A program made the position numbers and the translations under genes. From IMG/VR virus record IMGVR_UViG_3300030673_000004, positions 186,001-250,000 of that record: a DNA stretch of 64,000 bases; one strand, given 5' to 3'. Below, piece after piece: positions 256 to 62,784 of the stretch. Below the pieces are notes generated by a model that was given only the letters and a program-made list of their open reading frames with translations, did not search any database and was not told the DNA's origin. Every line of letters begins with the position of its first letter. Position 1 is the stretch's first letter.

Positions 256-284
256 TTGACAAATATACACAAGTAGTGTATATT
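256..284 (+). promoter_or_regulatory. sigma70-like promoter
   Basis: TTGACA(256-261)-N17-TATATT(279-284). Confidence 0.75.
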
Positions 285-1079: not shown

Positions 1080-1916
1080 ATGGAAATCCATAAGAATCGT
1101 GATCGTGCTCCTTACACGTTTGCCAACATCAATCTGTTGGGTCGCTGTAATGCTAATTGTTTTTTCTGCCTTGGAAAAGACATTGCAGACCAACTGGCTG
1201 GGTTGGATCAGATGTCTGTGCCATTCTCTGAGTGGGCAAACTTTGAGACATTTCTAACCCGCTGCACTGAATTGGGTGTGCATAAGCTGTACATGACTGG
1301 GCAGACGGCTGATGGTCTGCAATACAAGTACCTTGGGGAACTTGTGGATTATCTCCAGTCTCGTGACTTCACGGTGGGCTTGCGGTCTAACGGTCTTCTT
1401 GCTCTACAGAAGATGTCTATCATCAATAAGATGCAGGATGAGATTGCTTATTCCATTCATTCTCTGCGTCCGGAGGTGAACAAACTTATTGGTGCTCCCA
1501 TTCACCTGGACTGGGAGAAGATTATTCCTGCTAGTGGCGACAATGTTCGAGTGTCTATTGTGGTTAATAGGTATAATGCTGACGAGGTACTTGATGTCAT
1601 TAAGTATATCTCTCAGTTTAAGAATGTTCGCTACGTCCAAGTTCGTCGTATCTCGACGGATCTGCGGTTTGATCTTCTTAAGGAAGATGTTGAGGTCTAT
1701 GAGGGTTTGTATAACAACATTGCTACTCAGTATCCTAAGGTTGGTGAGTTTTACTTGTCTCAGGATCATATCATTCACGGTATGCACTGTTTCTTTTGGC
1801 GCACGGTGGAGACAAACATTAACAGTTTGAACTATTTTACCGATGGTACTTGCTCTGATGAATATTTTGTCGTAGAGGGCTATCTGAAGAACCGCGTACA
1901 GAAAGAAGTCATCTGA
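1080..1916 (+). CDS. radical SAM protein
   Basis: CNANCFFC (CxxxCxxC), later SNG motif. Confidence 0.85.
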   Translation: MEIHKNRDRAPYTFANINLLGRCNANCFFCLGKDIADQLAGLDQMSVPFSEWANFETFLTRCTELGVHKLYMTGQTADGLQYKYLGELVDYLQSRDFTVGLRSNGLLALQKMSIINKMQDEIAYSIHSLRPEVNKLIGAPIHLDWEKIIPASGDNVRVSIVVNRYNADEVLDVIKYISQFKNVRYVQVRRISTDLRFDLLKEDVEVYEGLYNNIATQYPKVGEFYLSQDHIIHGMHCFFWRTVETNINSLNYFTDGTCSDEYFVVEGYLKNRVQKEVI

Positions 1917-2763: not shown

Positions 2764-3177
2764 ATGCCAAGCGTTCGTGAATATGTAGAATCTCGTGCTT
2801 CTCAGCTAGGAATGAACAAAACTAATGTTCAGTATATCCTAGGTAACTTAGCAACTGCATCTATTGCTGGTGAAGTATCTGCAAGTGACTTGTATCAGTC
2901 GATGGCTGATCGTGCTTTGCAGTCTTTAGCTAAGCGGCTCAAGCGTGATGCTGATACGGAAAAGAAGCATAAGGAAGAATTTGAAGCTAATCGTCCCGCA
3001 AAGCGTCCTTTTGGAACTAATGATTCAGCCTTGGAAGAGGCTAAGGATCCGTTCACGGGGGAGCGTTTGAAGAAGGTGTATCTCCTAGGTGATCGTGAGG
3101 CACTTATGAATGAACACTCTAAGGTTGTTTATCCTATTCCAGATCTATCCAAAGTAGAGGGGGAAGACAAGGCATGA
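2764..3177 (+). CDS. hypothetical protein
   Basis: ORF with GGAGGT RBS. Confidence 0.75.
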   Translation: MPSVREYVESRASQLGMNKTNVQYILGNLATASIAGEVSASDLYQSMADRALQSLAKRLKRDADTEKKHKEEFEANRPAKRPFGTNDSALEEAKDPFTGERLKKVYLLGDREALMNEHSKVVYPIPDLSKVEGEDKA

Positions 3178-3620
3178 GTGCTACTGACATGATATCTGCT
3201 ACATTAGCCACTACCGGAGTGCCCCATTTGGTCATTGCCGAAGACACCCGAATAGATGCCAAAGTTACTATTCGTATTAAGCGCTTGCTAGATTTGACGG
3301 AACGTGGTCAGATACGCTGGGTGGCTACAGGTAGAGGTGACATATTCACTACGTATAACAAAGATGTTCAGTGCTCTGTGGTAGCTGTTGGTTTTGGGGA
3401 AGTTCCTGATGAGTATGCTCTGACTGTTTCATTCATTGGCGGTTCCTTAGGGGATCCTGAATTTAAGTACGAGGAAGTTCACTCCCCTGAGTATCCTCTG
3501 ATTGTTAAGCTTTTTGACGCAGCTTCAAAGCACAATATCCCAGAGAGCACGAGTACCTGGCCCTATCCTAAGTACTCTAACATATCAGATGCTCTTTCTG
3601 GTTTGCTGTCTGGTATTTAG
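3174..3620 (+). CDS. hypothetical protein, family A, with shared N-terminal motif
   Basis: ATGA overlap; ISATLATTGVPHLVIA; IKRLLDLTERGQIRW. Confidence 0.7.
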   Translation: MSATDMISATLATTGVPHLVIAEDTRIDAKVTIRIKRLLDLTERGQIRWVATGRGDIFTTYNKDVQCSVVAVGFGEVPDEYALTVSFIGGSLGDPEFKYEEVHSPEYPLIVKLFDAASKHNIPESTSTWPYPKYSNISDALSGLLSGI

Positions 3621-3622
3621 TA

Positions 3623-3952
3623 ATGTATGTTGTATACGCATCACAGGTGCTAAAATCATTTAATATACCATATATTGTGGTATCCTCATTAGGTGTAGCA
3701 CTACCTAGGCATATACTGCAGTTTACTTTGAAGGATAAGCATCTTACAGGTGATGGTACCTCCTACTGGGTTTATACCGGAATTACGTCTGTCGGACATA
3801 CTATAATCTCTGTTAAGATGCAAGGTCCCATTATACACGCGGCTGTTTGGCATAGCGGCTTAGAAGTTGGCTCTGTTGAGCTGGACACTATTACCGAGCT
3901 TCCAGAATCTTTGATAAATAAAGTATCTGGTGTGCTTAATATAATATCTTGA
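3623..3952 (+). CDS. hypothetical protein
   Basis: ORF; SQVLKSFNIPYIVVS resembles the shared motif. Confidence 0.55.
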   Translation: MYVVYASQVLKSFNIPYIVVSSLGVALPRHILQFTLKDKHLTGDGTSYWVYTGITSVGHTIISVKMQGPIIHAAVWHSGLEVGSVELDTITELPESLINKVSGVLNIIS

Positions 3953-3985
3953 CATATATATATATATATATAATTAATGTATATT
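3949..3985 (+). promoter_or_regulatory. sigma70-like promoter with (TA)9 tract in the spacer
   Basis: TTGACA(3949-3954), (TA)9 (3955-3972), ATTAATG, TATATT(3980-3985); spacer 25 nt. Confidence 0.65.
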
Positions 3986-4005
3986 TGAGCTAAGGGGTAC
4001 TGCAA

Positions 4006-4623
4006 ATGTCTAACACTAACACTAACACTAACACTAACACTAATTTTGTCTCTAGCCTATTGGGTAGCGCACATGTGGCTCATATTGCAGTTGCTTCGGA
4101 ATCACAAAAGCCACGATCCTGTGTGTTTGTTGATGGCGCTACTCCTACTTTCGATTTTTCTGGCTTCTGTGATCGCGCAAAGGTTAATGCTGAGCAGGAA
4201 GCTGTAAAAGTTTTTCATGTGCAGAAAAGCTATGCTAGGTTTAATCTGACATTTGACTACAAGGGGGCGGATCATAAGGGCTTAGCCGGTGTCGTGATTT
4301 GTAGCATGGATAATGGAGAACATTTTCAAATTAGTCTTCGTCCATCCGGAAACAGCCCTTTTGAGCATCGTGTTGTAGTTGAGCACAATGCAGATCATAA
4401 AGTGTACGATGAATCTGGCAAGGTGCTTAAATGGGTAGATGAAGAAGCTGAACGTTCTCGTCAGATGACTTCTGTTGTTTTTACTGGTATTTTTGTTTCT
4501 AGCAACAATGCCGAGGACATTGGTAGTTCCGCATTCTTTAATAAGCTGTTTACTGCTGTTGCTGAGAATGCTCCATACACAGAACAGCAAGATTCTTTGA
4601 TTAAGCGTGTAAAGCGTATCTAG
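4006..4623 (+). CDS. hypothetical protein with (NT)n N-terminus
   Basis: ORF; (ACTAAC)n repeat at 4010-4044; VSSLLGSAHVAHIAVAS. Confidence 0.75.
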   Translation: MSNTNTNTNTNTNFVSSLLGSAHVAHIAVASESQKPRSCVFVDGATPTFDFSGFCDRAKVNAEQEAVKVFHVQKSYARFNLTFDYKGADHKGLAGVVICSMDNGEHFQISLRPSGNSPFEHRVVVEHNADHKVYDESGKVLKWVDEEAERSRQMTSVVFTGIFVSSNNAEDIGSSAFFNKLFTAVAENAPYTEQQDSLIKRVKRI

Positions 4624-4645
4624 TTCTTACTCACACCTTTTGAAT

Positions 4646-4688
4646 AAAAACACCTGTACTTCTTAAAGAGACACAGGTGTTTTTATTT
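4646..4688. terminator. intrinsic terminator, possibly bidirectional
   Basis: AAAAACACCTGT...ACAGGTGTTTTTA inverted repeat. Confidence 0.65.
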
Positions 4689-4700
4689 TAAGGATAGTGC

Positions 4701-6845
4701 ATGCCTTCATTTGTAAAAGTTGGAGACGCTCCTAGTCAGAATTACTTTGGCACCAATATGATGTCAACAGCCCCTATGGCTGTTGCTAAGTCTGGCAAGC
4801 GCTCTGCATCAAATCTTGGGTATACAGGCACAGCTCAAGCTGATGTCATGTTCAATACAGATAGATACGCACCAAACGTAGAGTCCTTGGAGCGTGAAAG
4901 TCTTTTAGATGATATTACACCTAAAACTGATTATGCCCAAGCACAGCTATTCAACAGAATCTATCGTGATGATTCTGTAGCGGGTCAGGGCACGGATATG
5001 ATTGCTACCCTTCCCTGGTCAGATATGACCTTGTCCGGTATTGATGATCCAGCAATCATGCGCATCTATGAAGAAACCGTAGAGCAGTTGGATCCTGTTC
5101 AGTTGATGCCTGAGATAACACGCGAGTTTCTTAAGTTTGGACGCCACTCATCTACTTTGCTATTTGATGAGGATAATGGAACATTCTTTGATATGTTCGC
5201 ACATGATCCGCAGTTCTTAGAGATCACTCCTATTCCTATTCGTGGCTGGGATCCTAAGATTGATTGGGTTTGTGCTCCTGATATGCGAAAGTTCCTTGAG
5301 TCCAAGGATGACCGTGATAAAGCCGCTAAAGGCAGCTTGCCAGATAACCTACGCAGGGCTCTTCTTACAGGTAAGGCTGCTTTAGATCCAGCAACAACCT
5401 TGTATGTACCTCGTCGTGTTAATACCTATGATCATAAAGGTACATCTATATATTTTCGTATCTTACCGTATTATGCTATTGAAAAGCATTTACAGGCAGG
5501 TACTATTACAATGGCCCGCCGTCGTATTCGTTCTATTCTGCACGCCTCTGTAGGTATTGATAACGTGTGGGAACCCACGATGGACGAGTTGGATGAAGTC
5601 CAACGTATTTTTGTTCAGACAGAAGAGGATCCCACTGGTGCTGTTGTTGTTACTCGTAATGGTATAACGGTATCCGAATACCGTAATGGTGGTGACTTTT
5701 GGAAGTTGTCGGAGGAACAAGATTCTCTGCGTGCTGCAAAGCTTGCCGCTATGGGCTTATCTGACACCTTCTTGACTGGGGAAGCTAGCTATACAACAAC
5801 GGAAGCTACACTGTCCGTGTTCATGGAGAGCATTAAAGTCATGCGCTCCTATATTGCACAGAAGGTCTGGGAGCATACGATCTTTGATAGATTAGCTCGT
5901 GCTCATCAGTTTCTGCGCCGTACACCTGCTGAACTATCACACCATGTTCGTACCACAGCATCCATGTCCTTTGAAGATGCTATGGATATTCCACGTAACA
6001 GTTTATTGCTGCCTACGATTCACTGGAACAAAAATCTATCGCCTGAGTCGGATACTTCTTACATTGATATTTTGGAGAAGATAGAGCAGCATGGGGTGCC
6101 TATTTCTCTGAAGACATGGGCATCTGCTGGTGGCTTAGACCTGTCTTCTTTGATGGAGCAGTTGCCAGAAGATGCTAAGCTTCGTGGGCAAATTGACAAG
6201 CTGCATCCTGAAGAGGGTGAGGGTGGCGAAGGCGGTGGGAGCGGAGGTGGCGACTTTGGTGGAGCATTTAGTTCTACTGTTGCTACGCCTTCTACATACT
6301 TCTGGCAGCCTGCTATTAGATCTGTAGCTTATGCCTCTGGGAATATGTCCGCTGATCAACCTGTCATGGATTTAACACCGTCTGAGTGGGCTTCTGTTGT
6401 CAGCTATGTAACCAAAGACAACCGTCGCATGGGCATCCTAAAGGATAACGCCGCATTGTCTCGGTACCTGGGTGAGCGGTTTTCTGAGGCTACAGCAAAG
6501 ATAGAAACATCAAAGTTTCTTTTGAATAGACTTGGTTTCGCTACTGTTCCTGTTGCTCGTGAGACTGTTGAACGTCTTGCGAATCTATATGAGACACAAT
6601 CAAAAGTAGCACAGGCTAGTCATAATAAGGATCTTATTAGATTGGTTCGTGCTGAGATTATCAAACTTACCGATATATACAACCGTTCTTCTCAACAGAC
6701 GAGTTTAGGGTCGTCTTCTTCGGGTCCCAGTGCTCGTATAACTGATGGTTTTGCTTCTGTGAGCAATAATATGGTTAGTGCTAGCCAGGGACCCAAGATC
6801 AAGGATGAGACCTCCAAGCTTACTATGTATTCCGGATTGGGCTAG
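4701..6845 (+). CDS. probable portal protein with C-terminal extension
   Basis: GTSIYFRIL..YAIEK......MARRR.RSILHASVG and AAMGLSDTFLTGEASY resemble T4 gp20-type portals; Gly-rich linker before the extension. Confidence 0.6.
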   Translation: MPSFVKVGDAPSQNYFGTNMMSTAPMAVAKSGKRSASNLGYTGTAQADVMFNTDRYAPNVESLERESLLDDITPKTDYAQAQLFNRIYRDDSVAGQGTDMIATLPWSDMTLSGIDDPAIMRIYEETVEQLDPVQLMPEITREFLKFGRHSSTLLFDEDNGTFFDMFAHDPQFLEITPIPIRGWDPKIDWVCAPDMRKFLESKDDRDKAAKGSLPDNLRRALLTGKAALDPATTLYVPRRVNTYDHKGTSIYFRILPYYAIEKHLQAGTITMARRRIRSILHASVGIDNVWEPTMDELDEVQRIFVQTEEDPTGAVVVTRNGITVSEYRNGGDFWKLSEEQDSLRAAKLAAMGLSDTFLTGEASYTTTEATLSVFMESIKVMRSYIAQKVWEHTIFDRLARAHQFLRRTPAELSHHVRTTASMSFEDAMDIPRNSLLLPTIHWNKNLSPESDTSYIDILEKIEQHGVPISLKTWASAGGLDLSSLMEQLPEDAKLRGQIDKLHPEEGEGGEGGGSGGGDFGGAFSSTVATPSTYFWQPAIRSVAYASGNMSADQPVMDLTPSEWASVVSYVTKDNRRMGILKDNAALSRYLGERFSEATAKIETSKFLLNRLGFATVPVARETVERLANLYETQSKVAQASHNKDLIRLVRAEIIKLTDIYNRSSQQTSLGSSSSGPSARITDGFASVSNNMVSASQGPKIKDETSKLTMYSGLG

Positions 6846-19247: not shown

Positions 19248-19276
19248 AATATACATTAATTTTGTATGTATGTCAA
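19248..19276 (-). promoter_or_regulatory. sigma70-like promoter, repeated cassette
   Basis: reverse complement TTGACA-tacatacaaaattaatg-TATATT. Confidence 0.75.
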
Positions 19277-20216: not shown

Positions 20217-20538
20217 GCATTAACAGCTACTTTTGACGCATCACACAGTTCCTGATGTACTCAAGTATATCAAAGTATACCTAAAATGAGCTATACTTAG
20301 CTATACTTAGCTATACTTTGATACTATTTAAGTTTGATACCAAAATTTGTGGATACAAAGGCATCCATGCGTTCTTTGTTGCCATGTGCATTTCGCCAGT
20401 TATCCATGTGATCTGCTATTGTTTGCTTACCGTGCTGGCGATAGACAACAAAAGCCACGAGGAGCAAACCGATGGAAATTCCAAGGCTAGTGGGAGCATT
20501 AAGTTCAAGCATGCCTAATTTGTAAATCCGGGTGAGCA

Positions 20539-47340: not shown

Positions 47341-47819
47341 CTAAGCAGTTCAGAGAGCAGCTTGTTGACAAACTTCATGTCGGCCTTGCCCTTGAGTTGC
47401 GGACCAAGTTCCTCCATGACAGCGCCCTTGAGTTGCGGACCAAGTTCCTTCATGACAGCACCCATCAGTTTCTTGTTCTTCTCCATTCCTGCGAACAGAT
47501 TGTCCACAGTAGCAACAACCAAAGCACGAACAGCTTCTTCAGACATCTGCTGAGGAAGAAATTCCTTGAGTACGCTGATCTGGTAAGCTTCCTGTTCTGC
47601 CAAATCAGTACGACCTGCAGCGGTGTACTGACTAAGAGAATCTTCGCGCTGCTTGACGCCCTTAATCAGGGCATTCATTACATCATCCCTGTTGACATCC
47701 TTGCGGCATATTCCCTTGATCTCGCTGATGAGTGTACGCAGAATAAGGACACGGGCTGTATCCTTATTCTTAGCCGCGTTGATCATTTCTTCATAGATAG
47801 TATTAAACAACGTCTTCAC
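47337..47819 (-). CDS. GatB/YqeY domain protein
   Basis: AAKNKD...LRTL, KQREDS..QY..AGRTDLAEQE, EFLPQQMSEE, MGAVM..L..QLKGKAD. Confidence 0.9.
   Translation of the reverse strand: MKTLFNTIYEEMINAAKNKDTARVLILRTLISEIKGICRKDVNRDDVMNALIKGVKQREDSLSQYTAAGRTDLAEQEAYQISVLKEFLPQQMSEEAVRALVVATVDNLFAGMEKNKKLMGAVMKELGPQLKGAVMEELGPQLKGKADMKFVNKLLSELLS
47388..47459. repeat. 36-bp in-frame tandem duplication in the YqeY gene
   Basis: GCCCTTGAGTTGCGGACCAAGTTCCT(C/T)CATGACAGC x2, one mismatch. Confidence 0.9.
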
Positions 47820-49366: not shown

Positions 49367-49468
49367 TTGACATTTTTGGCTTTGCTTGTATATTTCGTAA
49401 TACGAAGCAGTTGGTTAGCGAATTACCTCCTGTTCGCTCTTTGACAGTGTGTGTTTGTACCTAGTGCG
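49367..49468 (+). promoter_or_regulatory. CRISPR promoter and leader
   Basis: TTGACA(49367-49372)-N16-TATATT(49389-49394), next to the most conserved repeats. Confidence 0.7.
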
Positions 49469-50013
49469 GTAGCACTTTGTACCCATGTGTGAATTGAAAC
49501 AAGTATGACCATGCATGCCGACAGCTTGAGGCGGGTAGCACTTTGTACCCATGTGTGAATTGAAACCGAGTATACCCTCGATCCCACCCAAGCTCCTTCG
49601 TAGCACTTTGTACCCATGTGTGAATTGAAACGAGGTATTGTCTTAATAAGGCATTAGCTAATGGGTAGCACTTTGTACCCATGTGTGAATTGAAACTCGC
49701 TGACAGGCTTAACGACGTTGGATCGCCCGTAGCATTTTGTACCCATGTGTGAATTGAAACTTCTCGACAGCCGCTCCGACAATTCCTGACAAGTAGCACT
49801 TTGCATCCCTGTGTGACTTGAAACAACGCTAGGTCGTGCGAGAGGCTTTGGCCAGAGTAGCATTTTGTACCCATGTGTGAATTGAAACATGGCGGCAGAT
49901 TAGTTGGCGGAGAAATTTGGGTAGTACTTTGTACCCCTGTGTGGATTGAAACTCTTACAGTTCGCATATCTGGATTGACATCCAGGAGCTTGTACCCATG
50001 TGTGAATTGAAAC
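49469..50013 (+). CRISPR. CRISPR array, 9 repeats and 8 spacers (32-34 bp)
   Basis: repeat GTAGCACTTTGTACCCATGTGTGAATTGAAAC at 49469, 49535, 49600, 49665 (identical), 49729, 49793, 49857, 49921 (variants) and 49985 (3-nt deletion). Confidence 0.97.
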
Positions 50014-50308: not shown

Positions 50309-52225
50309 TTGGCTATTCGCAAAAAGACTCCAATCTTGGGCGCTGCTCCGGGTGATGTGCGAACGACTAAGTCCTATAAGTTTGAGCTGTATCCAACAAA
50401 AGATCAGAGAGACAAGTTGTTTACTTTTCTTTGGGCAACTCGGTGCATGTACAATGATGCGCTTGAATGGTTGTTTACGGATAAGATGCTGTTTGATATG
50501 GGTGACATTGACGTGTGGCTAGAGCATCGCGTACTGGCTCTTCTTAGTGATACTGAGAAGAAACAAGCTATTCTTACTTTGGAGTTGGAAGAGCTGCAAA
50601 AACGGCCAGGCACACAATGTAAACAAAATAAGATTCTGGATAGCCTAGAGAAGATGCGTGGCAAACATGATACGTTTGTTTTAGGTTTAGCAAAAATGCG
50701 CACAGAATATGAGAAAAAGATCTGGCCACGTCTCTCTAGAGAGGACATGACTGTTCTTGCTGGTGCTATTCGGCGCTTGAATAAGTCACACCCTGCTTAT
50801 GACGCAAGTTTGGGAATTCCAGCGACTACATTTAATTCGACAGTAGCCAAACGCCTTAGCCAAGCACAGAAAAGCATTTACACGTCAGATCGTCTTTCTA
50901 AGAAAGACGGCAACTTTCTTGTTTCTCGTAGACGTGAATCTACTAAAACACACATTGTTACGTACACAGATCCGGAATCTGTTCAAAAGGTAGAGAACTT
51001 CCCGAATTTCAGATCTCGTACCTCTAGCTTTATTTTAGAGGCGCAGAAACCTTCCGCATTTATCAATGGTAAACTAGGTAATCTTAAGATTACCCCTGCA
51101 CTTACTGTTCAATTTTGTGCTTATGTTGACATTCTCACGGGATCAGCCAAAGAAATTACACAGGCTATCTCAGCTAGGCGTGTTATTGGGATGTCCGTAG
51201 GTCAACAGATTACTGTAGCAGTTGATGGTACTGGGCGTTGGTGGACTAGTATTACTATTGATACCAACCATAGTCCTGTGTTGTATCCTGTTGACATTAA
51301 TAAAACTATGGCACTTGATTTTCGTCCAGCCGCTATTACAACTAGTACCGGATTCCGGATGATGCGGAGTCTTGATGCTCTTCGTTCTGTAACTAGCTAT
51401 CCTAATTGTGCCGCTCTGGCTAAGAAGTATGAAAAGAATCAAAACGCTATTGTCATGAAGCAGCGTGAGGTTTCTCGTAAGTATGAGCTGCATAAGCGAG
51501 CTAGCCAGACGTTCAAGACTACACACGTTTGTCCTATTTGTGGCGCAGTTGCCTCAGACGAAGCTGTTGCTGATCTTAACACTTTTAAGTGTTCTTGTGG
51601 GTTCTCCGTGAGGATGAAATCTAAGAATCATCGTAAAGCCAAGTTTGAGCTATCTATGTTGCATGCTCGTAGTGCTGGTATACTGACAAACTTAAGACGG
51701 CACATTGTGCATTCCTGGGTAGCATCAGAAGCAACTACATTTGTCATTCAAGATATTCCTTTGAACGAAGGTTTCAAGGCAAAGGCAAAGACAAAGAAAG
51801 ATGGGGAGAAGGACAAAGATAAGAAGCCTCGCAGATGGCGTGGCTGCGCTATCCGACGGCGCAATATCAACAGGTTCACACATCAGCTAGCTGCTGGAAC
51901 ATTGCGTAGCATGCTTGTTGCGTCTGCTGCTACTATGCAGAAGAACGTGATCGTGGTCTCTTCTGACTATGATCCTCTGCACACCTGTAGCTGCGGTCAT
52001 GTTATTTCTACTGGTGCTACAATGTGTGATGATGTTGTTGCTAATGCACCTACCCGTCTACTGTATATTCCGTTTGATCACCCAAAACTTGTTCTTGGAG
52101 CTAAGTCAGGAACGGATGCTTTACGCAGATTTGGTGAAGCATTAACTCAGAAAGAAGCCCGTAAGCAAGCTAAGTTACTGCGAAAGGCTGCGTTGACTTC
52201 TGGCCAGGGGATTGCTGTTGATTAA
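50309..52225 (+). CDS. TnpB/Cas12f-like type V effector, RuvC-II Glu replaced by Gln
   Basis: KSYKFELYPTKDQ...TRCMYNDAL (IS605 OrfB-like N-terminus); RuvC-I MALD337; SKNHRKAK..L..LH helix; RuvC-II FVIQ481D; candidate RuvC-III D574/D575; GGAGA RBS. Confidence 0.85.
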   Translation: MAIRKKTPILGAAPGDVRTTKSYKFELYPTKDQRDKLFTFLWATRCMYNDALEWLFTDKMLFDMGDIDVWLEHRVLALLSDTEKKQAILTLELEELQKRPGTQCKQNKILDSLEKMRGKHDTFVLGLAKMRTEYEKKIWPRLSREDMTVLAGAIRRLNKSHPAYDASLGIPATTFNSTVAKRLSQAQKSIYTSDRLSKKDGNFLVSRRRESTKTHIVTYTDPESVQKVENFPNFRSRTSSFILEAQKPSAFINGKLGNLKITPALTVQFCAYVDILTGSAKEITQAISARRVIGMSVGQQITVAVDGTGRWWTSITIDTNHSPVLYPVDINKTMALDFRPAAITTSTGFRMMRSLDALRSVTSYPNCAALAKKYEKNQNAIVMKQREVSRKYELHKRASQTFKTTHVCPICGAVASDEAVADLNTFKCSCGFSVRMKSKNHRKAKFELSMLHARSAGILTNLRRHIVHSWVASEATTFVIQDIPLNEGFKAKAKTKKDGEKDKDKKPRRWRGCAIRRRNINRFTHQLAAGTLRSMLVASAATMQKNVIVVSSDYDPLHTCSCGHVISTGATMCDDVVANAPTRLLYIPFDHPKLVLGAKSGTDALRRFGEALTQKEARKQAKLLRKAALTSGQGIAVD

Positions 52226-52226
52226 A

Positions 52227-54399
52227 GTGAAAAAGCTTCGCAAGTATCAGGAAGAGACACTTACGTGGGCTTTCCATGTACTGGCTAATCCGCAGCGTCC
52301 ACATTTGTTGATTGGGCAGCCACCGGGTGCAGGAAAGTCTATGCAGGCCCATTTGATTAGTCGGTTTGCTCTGGAATGTCCTAGTCTAGGGATCAAGAAA
52401 ATTCTGGTACTGACACCATTGATAGCAATCCGTTTTGGGTTTGCACGTGATCGGGACTACGGCGTAACGTATACGTCTGACTCGTTTAGCTGGCTTCAGA
52501 ACGGTGGCGTTCGGCCACTAGACTTTCAGACAACAGATGGTGCTCTTCTAGCTATGCTGCAGACAGATCGTGTGGGTGCCTATATTGCATGTCACGCATC
52601 TTTGGCTAACGCAAAAGCTGAAGATGCTCATGCTTTTGAGCAGTTGGACGACTGCTCAGATTTACTTATTGTAGTTGATGAAGCACATCACCTTAATGCT
52701 GAATAACCTGACGAGTGTCGTACAGTGTGCTGTAGATAAAGGTGCTCGAATGCTGCTACTGACAGCAACGCCGTTTGTATCTACCGGTTCGTGGGAGTTC
52801 ATCTTAAAGAATAAGACAAAGTCTCGTATACGTCCGCTTAGTCAGCATATTGAAGAAGGCTTTGCACCTCGCCTGGAAAATGAGATCATCTATAGCGATA
52901 TCTGGCCTATGGAGAACGGACTCCCTTCGCCTGAGTTTGTGGCACGTAAAACGATTGAGACGTTTTTAGCAAATGATCGAGTCAAGAGTCTTGTTGTTGT
53001 ACCTGCTACACCGTCATGCCGGGCTTGCGGTACAACGGAGGAATACGTCGATAAGATCATAGACGAGTGCTACAAACTTGTGCCACGTACAGATATTTCT
53101 TTGTTGAATACTCTGGGCGATTCTAAGACAGATATTATCACCAAAGAGTGCCGTGGTGATACCTATCACGATATTCAATTCACGCCAACCACAGGCAAAT
53201 ACCGTGAGGGTGTGGATGATCCCAGGCTAGCCTGTATTCAATACTTTGTTCGTCCGAAGTCCTCTATTCTTAGCGTTCAGATTCCGGGTAGGACTCTTCG
53301 CGAGAAACCTGAAGGATATCTGCCTGTGCAGTTTAGATTTAAGTCTAAACAGATATTCCATACTTCTTCGGCTGCTGGCGCCCTGATAGAATTTTCCTGT
53401 GATGTTCTAAAGTACATTCTCCGAACAGAGAATCCTTTAGCTGCTGCTACTCTGCCACCAATCAAAGCTATGATCGGCGAACTGCGTATGCGCAGGCGGC
53501 AAGCAGACAATTCAGGTGATATTAAATTAGCACAAAGTTATGCTGAATTTGCGGATGCCTTGGAAGATGACGCTGAAACAACTATGTGTGAGGCTCTTGC
53601 CGACTTAGATGCTCAAGTTACGCTGGCCTATGAGACTCAGCAAGGAGTAACTCTTCCTAAGCTAATTCAGCAGTATGGAATGGACTCAAACGTTGTTAAA
53701 TTGGCTATGTATCAACAGCTTAAGAATCATCCTGATAAGTTATTGGAGCACATGGAGTCTATCATTGAACGGCGTACACGAAATCACAAAGGCGGAAAGC
53801 ATAAGCCGGGAAGTACGCCGTCATTTGAGATTGCCGACTTTTACCTTCATATGCTTGCAGAGCAGTATGCTGATGAAGAAATAGATCAGTTTGTGACAAC
53901 TATTGATAGTCGCGTTTTGACCGAGTGGTCTGATCGCTGGGAGAAACTTAGAGACAGGACAGATCTGGAAAAAGCTGACGGTCTAGTTCAGGCTTTCAGC
54001 ACGGGTAGCCTTCGTCGTGACGATCATATCAACTACCCATCGTTTGAAGAGTTTCGGCTGCGTAATCTGCTCAGTACGGTGCTGCCCGCAGTTAAACGTC
54101 CCAGTTTAGAGGCTCGTGCGCTGTTAGATGCTGCTGGGTTGTCTAGTCGCATTTTTGCTGATAACTGGAATGATCCTCTTGTTTGTAACAATGGTACCTT
54201 GCTAACTCTTCAGCGTTTTGTACCTTTGGCATCTTGGGTGAAGGCGCATGGAAGGCTACCCCAGATTTCTTCTGATCTAGAAGAGAGGTCCGCCTATAAA
54301 TTCTACAGAATCTATAAGGACAAAATGACTGTAGTTGCTTCTCAGCACACTGCTAGTATCATACAGGAACTACATATAGGAGAAGTCTTGGATGCCTAA
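52227..54399 (+). CDS. SF2 (DExH, Res-like) helicase split by a frameshift at ~52704
   Basis: LRKYQ, GQPPGAGKS, VLTP and IVVDEAHH in ORF 52212-52706; LTATP, EGVDDP, QIPGRTLR and HA-like HGRLP in ORF 52675-54399. Confidence 0.85.
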
Positions 54400-55693: not shown

Positions 55694-55993
55694 ATGTACC
55701 GTACTATTTTTGGCAGTGTAATCTTTGCGTTTGCTCTGGTACACGCCGCAGATAATAAGCCATGGGATTCACAAAATATAGATCCGGTTGCTGTCCAAGC
55801 ATCTGCGAGTTCTTCTTGCTCTGACAGCGCTAAACGAGCATTCAGTCAAGCAATTCAATCTTCCCTGACGAAGAATAACAAGTTCAGTGTTCATCTATTG
55901 ATTCAAAATGGTAAGAAGTACGGTGTGCTTCGTGAAGTTCTGGACTATGTCCAATACTGGAAGCGACAAGATATTGGGATGTTGGAGCAATAA
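55694..55993 (+). CDS. exported hypothetical protein
   Basis: MYRTIFGSVIFAFALVHA signal peptide; AAGGA RBS. Confidence 0.6.
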   Translation: MYRTIFGSVIFAFALVHAADNKPWDSQNIDPVAVQASASSSCSDSAKRAFSQAIQSSLTKNNKFSVHLLIQNGKKYGVLREVLDYVQYWKRQDIGMLEQ

Positions 55994-56532
55994 TGTTTCA
56001 AGTCAAAAAGACAATACAGGCATTGTCTTATTTTTGTAGAGAATCTAATAGTTCTGTCAAGATATCTACGGCTTTAGCTTGGTTGTTTCTTGCCGATGTG
56101 TCACATTTGCGAGAATACGGAAGAACCATATCGGAAGATACTTATATCCGAACAGCTACTGGATTTGAGCCGGTGAGTACTCGTGACCTACTTACTAGGC
56201 ACATCAAGGCATATGTAACTACGCCGGATGTGGTTTACTGTCGTCTGTGTTTGGATGTAACGCCTAATGATGTGGATATACGCAAGGGAGCTATTTGGGA
56301 TACCGATGAGATGTCTGATTCCGATACTCAAGTTCTAGCAACTACTTATTCCGCATATCATAGATTTAGTCGTAGTCAGCTTAGAGCCATTGTTAGGACA
56401 TTTCCAGAATGGCAAGCAGCGCACTTAAAATCTGTAGTATCTGCTGAATTGTTCCTAACAGGTGCTACTGACATAGCAAAAATTCATTTCTATCTAAGTC
56501 TTAGATTTCCTTCTCGACTGGAAATTGTATGA
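55993..56532 (+). CDS. Panacea/SocA-like (DUF4065) antitoxin-domain protein
   Basis: LFLADVSHLREYGRTISEDTY, DEMSDSD...L, FPEW. Confidence 0.7.
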   Translation: MFQVKKTIQALSYFCRESNSSVKISTALAWLFLADVSHLREYGRTISEDTYIRTATGFEPVSTRDLLTRHIKAYVTTPDVVYCRLCLDVTPNDVDIRKGAIWDTDEMSDSDTQVLATTYSAYHRFSRSQLRAIVRTFPEWQAAHLKSVVSAELFLTGATDIAKIHFYLSLRFPSRLEIV

Positions 56533-62721: not shown

Positions 62722-62784
62722 TTGACAAAGATACAAAATTAATGTATATTTGTTCTTGTCACCCCAACAAGGAGTTCTCAAATG
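62722..62784 (+). repeat. promoter-leader-RBS cassette, copy 2
   Basis: TTGACA-aagatacaaaattaatg-TATATT-tgttcttgtcaccccaacaaggagttctcaaATG. Confidence 0.85.

What the first reader, a model, noticed from the sequence alone, without database searches (positions are those of the whole stretch)
3949..4044. (TA)n microsatellite inside a promoter spacer: candidate phase-variable switch
Seen: sibling promoters are TTGACA-N17-TATATT, several ending ATTAATG-TATATT. Here the same ends are 25 nt apart, exactly four TA units too many, so (TA)5 would restore 17. An alternative TATAAT at 3969-3974 is only 14 nt from the -35. The downstream gene also starts with an in-frame (ACTAAC)n tract. Known: repeat-length changes between -35 and -10 cause phase variation in bacteria. 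Inference: slippage tunes expression of gene 4006. Assembly error in the tract is possible.
Basis: partly seen in the sequence, partly recalled or inferred. Interest (0 to 1): 0.6.

Follow-up and report, generated by a model that had tools for sequence, protein, structure and literature searches.

The report
Stretched promoter spacer in jumbo phage
A giant phage from peat carries a real (TA)9 microsatellite that pushes the two halves of an otherwise standard promoter 8 bases too far apart in front of a dispensable, strain-variable gene; it could act as a slippage switch, but so far it looks like a promoter-weakening mutation and no length variation has been seen.

Summary
TTGACA (3949-3954), (TA)9 (3955-3972), ATTAATG and TATATT (3980-3985) give a 25-nt spacer. 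Four separate assemblies reproduce it letter for letter.

The window lies in a 375.5-kb phage genome with 42 sibling promoters: 40 have a 17-nt spacer, 2 have 16, and only this one has 25. Orthologous promoters in four related lineages all have 17 and no TA tract, so the tract is a lineage-specific gain of 4 units. The hexamer tract in the gene start also gained 4 units.

These are the two longest microsatellites in the genome, and they lie 38 nt apart. Contig breakpoints suggest that a longer hexamer variant co-exists in the samples.

The gene (205 aa, function unknown) has lost one of two domains in frame. It is absent from freshwater strains with about 99% identical flanks. It remains under purifying selection (dN/dS 0.13) and can probably be read through from upstream.

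Spacer arithmetic gives good promoters at (TA)4-6 and at (TA)10-11, where TTGACA-N16/18-TATAAT forms. (TA)9 is therefore OFF, one slip from ON, like H. influenzae hifA/hifB.

No TA length variation was seen at consensus level, and raw reads were not available. Best reading: a slippage-made promoter-down allele in a plastic accessory locus. A programmed switch is possible (about 0.2).

The parts
256..284 (+). Upstream sibling promoter (TTGACA-N17-TATATT) at the head of the co-directional gene string that runs to 4623
3174..3620 (+). 148-aa gene, first of three tandem paralogs that share a roughly 23-aa N-terminal leader
3623..3952 (+). 109-aa paralog (P0002); its TGA stop lies inside the -35 hexamer
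3949..3954 (+). -35 hexamer TTGACA, conserved in the orthologous promoters of relatives
3955..3972 (+). (TA)9 microsatellite; orthologs have an imperfect TA-rich 10 nt here, so this is +4 units (+8 nt)
3969..3974 (+). Alternative -10 TATAAT made of the tract end plus AT. Its spacer to the -35 is 2n-4: 14 now, 16 at n=10, 18 at n=11
3973..3979 (+). ATTAATG, the conserved promoter-proximal end of the sibling spacer
3980..3985 (+). -10 hexamer TATATT of the sibling promoter class; spacer to the -35 is 2n+7, i.e. 25 now
3993..3998 (+). Ribosome-binding site AAGGGG, 7 nt before the ATG
   Evidence: read from the sequence
4006..4623 (+). Accessory gene, 205 aa (P0001): leader plus one domain. Function unknown, very rare family
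4010..4043 (+). (CTAACA)5.67 in frame, encoding (NT)n. Orthologs have 1.67 copies, so this is +4 units. Logan contigs break at 4039/4014, as expected if a variant at least one unit longer co-exists
4099..4104 (+). Junction of the in-frame loss of domain 1 (about 131 codons) relative to the 336/337-aa orthologs; leader ...VASE joined to SQKPR...
4642..4692 (+). Intrinsic terminator hairpin plus U-run that closes the operon before the portal gene
   Evidence: (-26.4 kcal/mol, z -6.4)
4701..6845 (+). Portal protein gene, start of the structural module
   Evidence: phrog_16240, E 1.7e-112

Best explanation
The (TA)9 tract is a lineage-specific replication-slippage expansion (+4 units, +8 bp) inside the spacer of a conserved sigma-70-type phage promoter. 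That promoter sits in front of the last gene of an early-type operon.

The expansion moves the perfect -35 (TTGACA) 25 nt from the TATATT -10. The dedicated promoter is therefore predicted to be disabled or strongly weakened. What remains 17 nt upstream of the -10 is only TATATA, a 3/6 match to the -35 consensus.

The gene is still intact and constrained. It is probably still expressed at a lower level by read-through from upstream promoters, because no convincing terminator precedes it.

The change is one of several slippage or deletion events at a hyper-plastic accessory locus. The others are a +4-unit hexamer expansion, an in-frame domain deletion, and deletion of the whole cassette in sister strains. 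I read all of them as relaxed selection, or selection for less of this product.

The tract is intrinsically mutable, so rare (TA)10/11 progeny with TTGACA-N16/18-TATAAT must arise. Programmed, selected switching is not demonstrated.

Shown: the anatomy, the derived state, reproducibility across assemblies, and the plasticity and constraint of the gene. Inferred: the effect on transcription, read-through, and the direction of selection.
For: - 40 of 42 sibling promoters have N17, 2 have N16 and none has another length.
- Orthologous promoters upstream of the homologous gene in L002-L006, L007 and L014 are TTGACA-N17-TATATT; L012/L013 have TTGACA-N17-TAACTT. None has a TA tract.
- A weight matrix built from the siblings scores 40.5 bits at n=5 (sibling median 39.7) and no more than 19.1 at any other n; it scores 17.8 at n=9.
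- The tract is identical in four separate assemblies.
- The two longest microsatellites of the genome are adjacent.
- Domain 1 has been lost in frame.
- Promoter and gene are absent from two freshwater runs with about 99% identical flanks.
- dN/dS is 0.13 against the L002 ortholog.
- There is no convincing terminator between 256 and 4006, and a strong one at 4642-4692.
Against: - No transcription data exist, so the residual activity of the N25 arrangement is unknown.
- A conserved G (mostly TG) directly 5' of TATATT might give some -35-independent activity, although it sits one base closer than the canonical TGn motif.
- Purifying selection on the coding sequence, and the fact that all changes are in frame, argue that the product still matters. 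That fits a tuned or switchable gene as well as a down-shifted one.
- n=9 lies exactly one slip from a perfect N16 promoter, which may not be coincidence.
Confidence: 0.58

Rival explanations
1. It is a genuine contingency (phase-variable) promoter. Slippage of the TA tract during phage replication toggles the gene between OFF (n=7-9) and ON (n=10-11 through TTGACA-N16/18-TATAAT, or n=4-6 through TATATT). Each burst would then hold a minority of high expressers, which is bet-hedging against a host defence or condition where the product helps or hurts.
For: - The spacer arithmetic gives 12/12 consensus promoters at n=10 (N16) and n=11 (N18) and none at n=7-9.
- This is the same (TA)9-11 logic reported for H. 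influenzae hifA/hifB (PMC2651432, PMC3899988).
- The tract is well above the 5-unit threshold used for dinucleotide repeats (PMC2651432).
- The neighbouring hexamer tract appears length-polymorphic in the same samples.
- The gene is accessory and strain-variable yet intact and constrained.
- Slippage-driven contingency loci have recently been shown in phages (bioRxiv 10.1101/2025.10.21.683753).
- Among other viral contigs, TTGACA(TA)n tracts of at least 7 units often differ in n between copies of the same locus.
Against: - All assemblies show n=9, and no bubble or break at the tract appears in the Logan contigs. Contigs hide minor variants, however.
- The tract is absent from every orthologous locus, so it is young and not a conserved device.
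- Reaching n=9 from the ancestral N17 state required passing through several OFF lengths, which implies the promoter was not under selection at that time.
- Only one TTGACA-N17-TATAAT promoter exists in the genome.
Confidence: 0.22
2. It is functionally neutral. The gene is transcribed mainly from upstream promoters as the distal gene of the operon. The internal promoter was redundant, so its spacer drifted freely. The tract has no regulatory meaning.
For: - The genes from 2764 to 3952 are tightly packed and co-directional, with no convincing terminator before 4006.
- The gene remains under purifying selection despite the broken spacing.
Against: - The internal promoter is conserved at N17 in four related lineages, including distant ones, which argues that it normally matters.
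- The co-occurrence of three other changes in the same gene suggests more than drift at one site.
Confidence: 0.15
3. It is an assembly or sequencing artefact in a low-complexity tract.
Against: - Identical (TA)9 and hexamer counts appear in IMG/VR, JGI, ENA MEGAHIT k141 and Logan k31 assemblies.
- Nine contigs of 0.2-1 Mb encode the exact 205-aa protein.
- Depth in the two runs laid is 30x and 97x.
Confidence: 0.02

Closest known systems
Haemophilus influenzae hifA/hifB fimbrial promoter, (TA)9-11 between -35 and -10 (van Ham et al. 1993, as cited in PMC2651432 and PMC3899988)
   Same: Same repeat unit and the same position between the -35 and -10 hexamers. The size range is the same, and so is the spacer series: the TATAAT here would lie at 14, 16 and 18 nt for n = 9, 10 and 11.
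   Different: - Here the host is a lytic-type jumbo phage, not a bacterium.
- The promoter is single and unidirectional.
- The tract is not conserved in orthologs.
- No length polymorphism or expression change has been observed.
- A second -10 (TATATT) gives another ON window at n=4-6.
Homopolymer spacer switches in bacteria (Neisseria meningitidis porA poly-G; Mycoplasma hyorhinis vlp; PMC3899988)
   Same: Changes in repeat length alter the -35/-10 spacing and so the strength of transcription.
   Different: Those are mononucleotide tracts that change spacing in 1-nt steps; here the steps are 2 nt and the tract is far from the ancestral optimum.
Phage contingency loci in T2/T4 and other phages (Gomez, Barrick and Waters, bioRxiv 10.1101/2025.10.21.683753)
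   Same: Polymerase slippage at simple repeats in a phage genome generates heterogeneous progeny. The affected genes include accessory genes involved in defence evasion.
   Different: Those are homopolymers of at least 6 bp, mostly inside ORFs, that act by frameshift. The paper's text contains neither 'promoter' nor 'dinucleotide'. Here the repeat is a dinucleotide in a promoter spacer, next to an in-frame hexamer.
Phage 'morons' and promoter-plus-terminator accessory cassettes (from general knowledge of lambdoid and T4-type phages; not tested here)
   Same: A gene with its own sigma-70-type promoter, followed by a terminator, lying beside the structural module and present or absent between close strains.
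   Different: Homologs occupy the same slot in all more distant relatives found. The gene is therefore an old resident being lost or remodelled, not a recent insertion.

Membership tests
SSR-mediated phase-variable promoter (hif type) | Simple repeat located between the -35 and -10 hexamers of a real promoter | tested here: met
   (TA)9 lies between TTGACA and TATATT of a promoter class with 42 copies, and the orthologous promoters are N17.
SSR-mediated phase-variable promoter (hif type) | Tract long enough to slip at high frequency | tested here: met
   The tract has 9 units. PMC2651432 uses a 5-unit threshold for dinucleotide repeats, and hif works at 9-11. It is the longest dinucleotide repeat in 375 kb.
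SSR-mediated phase-variable promoter (hif type) | Tract length varies within or between populations | tested here: inconclusive
   Every assembly examined has n=9. All runs holding the phage are kept only as contigs, which hide minor variants. The read-level distribution could not be tested.
SSR-mediated phase-variable promoter (hif type) | The repeat is retained at the orthologous locus in related strains, with differing lengths | tested here: not met
   L002-L006, L007, L014 and L012/L013 have a fixed 17-nt spacer with at most (TA)3. Freshwater strains lack the locus altogether.
SSR-mediated phase-variable promoter (hif type) | Expression depends on repeat number | not testable with these tools
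   Only spacer arithmetic and a weight-matrix model are available. No RNA run holds the phage.
Sibling sigma-70-type promoter class of this phage | TTGACA and TATATT separated by 16-17 nt | tested here: not met
   Both hexamers and the ATTAATG spacer end are present, but the spacing is 25. The weight-matrix score is 17.8 bits against a sibling median of 39.7.
Phage contingency loci (homopolymer frameshift type) | Homopolymer of at least 6 bp inside an ORF giving reversible frameshifts | tested here: not met
   The repeats here are a dinucleotide in non-coding DNA and a hexamer that stays in frame.
Accessory promoter-gene-terminator cassette | Own promoter, own terminator, and presence/absence between close strains | tested here: met
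   Promoter, terminator, and a joint from 3930 to 4621 in two freshwater runs.

The most novel reading that the evidence does not exclude
A jumbo phage uses a dinucleotide microsatellite in a promoter spacer as a transcriptional contingency switch for an accessory early gene: (TA)9 is OFF and one slip gives TTGACA-N16-TATAAT, which is ON. It is coupled to a length-variable N-terminal (NT)n tract. As far as my literature searches reached, this would be the first promoter-level, hif-like phase variation described in a virus of bacteria.
Probability: 0.2. Interest if true: 0.75.

Novelty: new variant of a known kind. Interest (0 to 1): 0.5.

Why it matters
If the tract switches, phage bet-hedging by slippage would extend from frameshifts in coding homopolymers to control of transcription. 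It would also give a compact natural example for testing how phages diversify expression of accessory, possibly defence-related genes within a single burst.

Even as a plain promoter-down allele, the locus is a clean natural series. The same slot holds a two-domain gene with an N17 promoter, a one-domain gene with an N25 promoter, and no gene at all. That series marks this orphan protein family as a target of rapid phage-host co-evolution and worth a functional test.

Tried and rejected
- **Assembly artefact.** Rejected: four assemblies agree.
- **Read-level tract lengths.** Not obtainable. All 14 runs are kept as Logan contigs, and the single read-laying run masks the repeats at 3944-4051.
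- **Other tract lengths in public collections.** A flank-anchored gap pattern gave no hit in viral contigs and one hit in metagenome contigs, also n=9.
- **Relatives of the gene in IMG/VR.** None were found with the protein, the portal or a profile. One search failed because the alignment was too divergent.
- **Function of the 205-aa protein.**
  - Pfam and PHROGs gave nothing, and the ESM Atlas gave nothing usable.
  - Only 5 representatives were found among 1.84 billion proteins.
  - The AlphaFold model has mean pLDDT 66.6, with a usable core at residues 52-195.
  - Foldseek against PDB and BFVD gave no hit at E<=0.001.
  - VIA-align's best match is the actin-capping-protein fold, Z 9.0/8.3, at the level the tool calls common for unmatched models. 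I treat this as topology only.
- **Capsid-targeting leader idea.** The shared N-terminal leader occurs only in the three tandem paralogs, and the promoter class looks early. I do not claim it.
- **Extended -10 idea.** The conserved TG abuts the hexamer with no intervening base, and the scan tool reports no TG. I dropped it as a firm argument.
- **Divergent gene using the tract, as in hifA/hifB.** Rejected: there is no credible minus-strand gene.
- **Survey of TTGACA(TA)>=7 in viral contigs.** It shows that such tracts vary between copies of a locus, but mostly in very AT-rich genomes. It is evidence of mutability only, not of promoter function.

Full report
**1. What is there**

The window is bases 186,001-250,000 of a 375,537-bp virus record with direct terminal repeats, that is, a jumbo phage. 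Runs holding it at 100% of sampled words are peat metagenomes.

At the reported place the sequence reads:
- TTGACA at 3949-3954
- (TA)9 at 3955-3972
- ATTAATG at 3973-3979
- TATATT at 3980-3985
- ribosome-binding site AAGGGG at 3993-3998
- ATG at 4006
- (CTAACA)5.67 at 4010-4043, in frame, encoding MS(NT)5N...

The spacer is 25 nt. TATAAT at 3969-3974 lies 14 nt from the -35.

**2. Is it more than chance, and is it real**

The genome holds 42 TTGACA-N-TATATT promoters. Forty have a 17-nt spacer, two have 16, and this is the only other length. In the window alone there are 11 such sites against 0.09 expected. Seventeen of the 42 end in ATTAATG-TATATT. Many also share a 5'UTR, so this is a repeated promoter/leader cassette. 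It drives small ORFs, sequences that look like tRNAs (not confirmed with a tRNA finder), and a CRISPR array.

A census of simple repeats shows that (TA)9 and (CTAACA)5 are the longest di- and hexanucleotide repeats in the whole genome. The next best are (AT)5 and three hexamer copies. The two lie 38 nt apart. Two independent random placements would fall within 100 nt with a probability of about 5e-4.

The same letters occur in an ENA MEGAHIT k141 contig, a Logan k31 contig and a JGI contig. Nine contigs of 0.2-1 Mb encode the exact 205-aa product. Assembly error is excluded.

**3. Comparative evidence**

The protein has only two close homolog clusters, P0003 (336 aa, 90% identity) and P0004 (337 aa, 72%). 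Their loci (L002-L007) are syntenic: genes of 137, 146/148 and 109/110 aa, then this gene, then the portal.

In the DNA alignment:
- The orthologous promoter is TTGACA-N17-TATATT in all six relatives, with an imperfect TA-rich stretch where the window has (TA)9.
- The gene start has 1.67 hexamer copies where the window has 5.67.

Both tracts are therefore derived gains of exactly four units.

More distant single-domain homologs (P0005-P0007) are 3 of only 5 representatives found among 1.84 billion proteins. Two of them (P0005, P0006) occupy the same slot upstream of the portal, again behind N17 promoters. The internal promoter is thus conserved, and the window's N25 is the outlier.

**4. The gene is a hot spot**

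- P0003 and P0004 are leader-D1-D2 proteins, where D1 and D2 are about 28% identical. The window's protein is leader-D2. It has lost about 131 codons in frame at ...VASE|SQKPR..., between short similar motifs.
- In two freshwater runs from different studies, with about 99% identical flanks, a joint links 3930 to 4621 with 22 other letters between. Read in frame, those letters are a diverged tail and stop codon of the 109-aa gene. Promoter and gene are cleanly absent there.
- Logan k31 contigs from the peat samples end at 4039 and restart at 4014. A de Bruijn simulation shows no break for the reference alone. It gives exactly these breakpoints if a form at least one hexamer unit longer co-exists. 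A shorter form would give 4037/4016. This is indirect evidence that the hexamer tract is length-polymorphic. Stutter, or foreign k-mers, cannot be excluded.
- A TA variant would form a simple bubble that the contig step can pop, so the contigs say nothing about minor TA lengths.

**5. Is the gene still in use**

The ORF is intact and every change is in frame. dN/dS against L002 is 0.13, similar to the neighbouring small genes at 0.03-0.10. Its dS (0.37) is lower than that of its neighbours (0.59-2.2), which hints at recent exchange of this segment.

The three genes at 3174, 3623 and 4006 share a conserved N-terminal leader that is found nowhere else in the genome.

Function remains unknown:
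- Pfam and PHROGs gave no hit.
- Foldseek gave no significant structural match.
- The best structural match is a borderline helix-sheet-helix resemblance to actin-capping protein.

**6. Transcription context**

Genes from 2764 to 3952 are tightly packed and co-directional. I found no convincing intrinsic terminator before 4006. A strong one follows the gene (4642-4692, -26.4 kcal/mol, z -6.4), just before the portal gene.

Gene 4006 is therefore the distal gene of an early-type operon with an extra internal promoter. Read-through can probably still express it.

**7. How the tract should act (inference)**

A weight matrix built from the 40 N17 siblings scores the locus at 40.5 bits for n=5 (sibling median 39.7) and at no more than 19.1 for any other n; it scores 17.8 at n=9.

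With generic hexamers the states are:

| (TA)n | Promoter formed | Spacer |
|---|---|---|
| 4, 5, 6 | TTGACA / TATATT | 15, 17, 19 |
| 7, 8, 9 | none found | - |
| 10, 11 | TTGACA / TATAAT (12/12 match) | 16, 18 |
| 12 and above | none found | - |

At n=9 the -10 TATATT faces only TATATA (3/6) at 17 nt. The conserved TG abuts the hexamer and is not the canonical TGn.

I conclude that the dedicated promoter is disabled or much weakened now. A single +1 slip would create a consensus N16 promoter. This is the same series as the (TA)9-11 tract of H. influenzae hifA/hifB (PMC2651432, PMC3899988).

**8. Weighing switch against decay**

For a switch:
- the position of n=9, one slip from a consensus promoter;
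- the likely instability of a 9-unit tract, given that other viral TTGACA(TA)n loci differ in n between contigs;
- the apparently polymorphic hexamer next door;
- an intact, constrained accessory gene;
- recent evidence for slippage contingency loci in phages (bioRxiv 10.1101/2025.10.21.683753).

Against a switch:
- n=9 in every assembly;
- no repeat at any orthologous locus;
- the path from N17 to N25 runs through several OFF lengths, which implies the promoter was not being maintained;
- the same gene has also lost a domain, and sister strains have lost it altogether.

I therefore favour a slippage-made promoter-down allele in a locus under relaxed or negative selection (0.58). The alternatives are a selected switch (0.22), neutrality (0.15) and artefact (0.02).

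**9. Novelty**

Promoter-spacer repeats are classical in bacteria. Phage contingency loci described so far are coding homopolymers, and that paper contains neither 'promoter' nor 'dinucleotide'.

A hif-like dinucleotide spacer tract in a phage would be a new variant of a known kind, if it is functional. As it stands it is a well-documented candidate with a clear, cheap test.

Noticed in passing
window 49468-50013 and 50309-52225: A CRISPR array of 9 repeats (32-nt repeat, spacers of about 32 nt) sits directly behind a sibling promoter (49367-49394, N16). It is followed by a 638-aa protein with HTH_OrfB_IS605 and a weak Cas12f1-like TNB domain, so it looks like a compact Cas12/TnpB-type effector carried by the jumbo phage.
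   Followed up: partly
genome-wide; e.g. window 62722-62782 and 19248-19276 (minus strand): The sibling promoters come as a cassette with a conserved spacer (ATACAAAATTAATG). Many also share a 5'UTR (about 24 nt ending in AAGGAG) in front of small ORFs of 60-190 aa. This looks like a repeated early promoter/leader module.
   Followed up: partly
genome positions 95833, 96029 and 110575 (outside the window): Sibling promoters lie directly in front of sequences that look like tRNAs. This was not checked with a tRNA finder.
   Followed up: no
window 3930-4621, compared with freshwater runs X5 and X6: Close strains (about 99% identity in the flanks) lack the promoter and the gene. The tail of the 109-aa gene is much more diverged than its surroundings, which suggests a recombination boundary.
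   Followed up: partly
window 4099-4620 compared with L002: Synonymous divergence of this gene segment (dS 0.37) is lower than that of all neighbouring genes (0.59-2.2). This hints at recent lateral exchange of the cassette between lineages.
   Followed up: no
window 3174-4100: Three tandem genes (148, 109 and 205 aa) share a conserved N-terminal leader of about 23 aa (pattern ..SS.L......H.VVAS), found nowhere else in the genome. Distant single-domain homologs P0005-P0007 keep it too.
   Followed up: partly
window 55993-56532 and 52212-52706: A SocA/Panacea antitoxin-like domain protein and a ResIII helicase-like fragment lie near the CRISPR region; these may be defence or counter-defence genes.
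   Followed up: no
L014:1-1702: A related phage carries a resolvase and a Cas12f1-like TnpB gene just upstream of the syntenic 137-aa gene. This is an IS605/IS607-type insertion that is absent from the window.
   Followed up: no
window 47388-47470 and 20289-20318; genome 35-45: Other repeats: a 36-nt tandem repeat x2.3 inside an ORF, a 10-nt repeat x3, and a poly-C(11) 35 nt from the genome end.
   Followed up: no
window 1080-1916: A radical SAM protein gene lies in the same operon region. The relative L002 also has a Pyr_excise (T4 endonuclease V-like) gene upstream.
   Followed up: no
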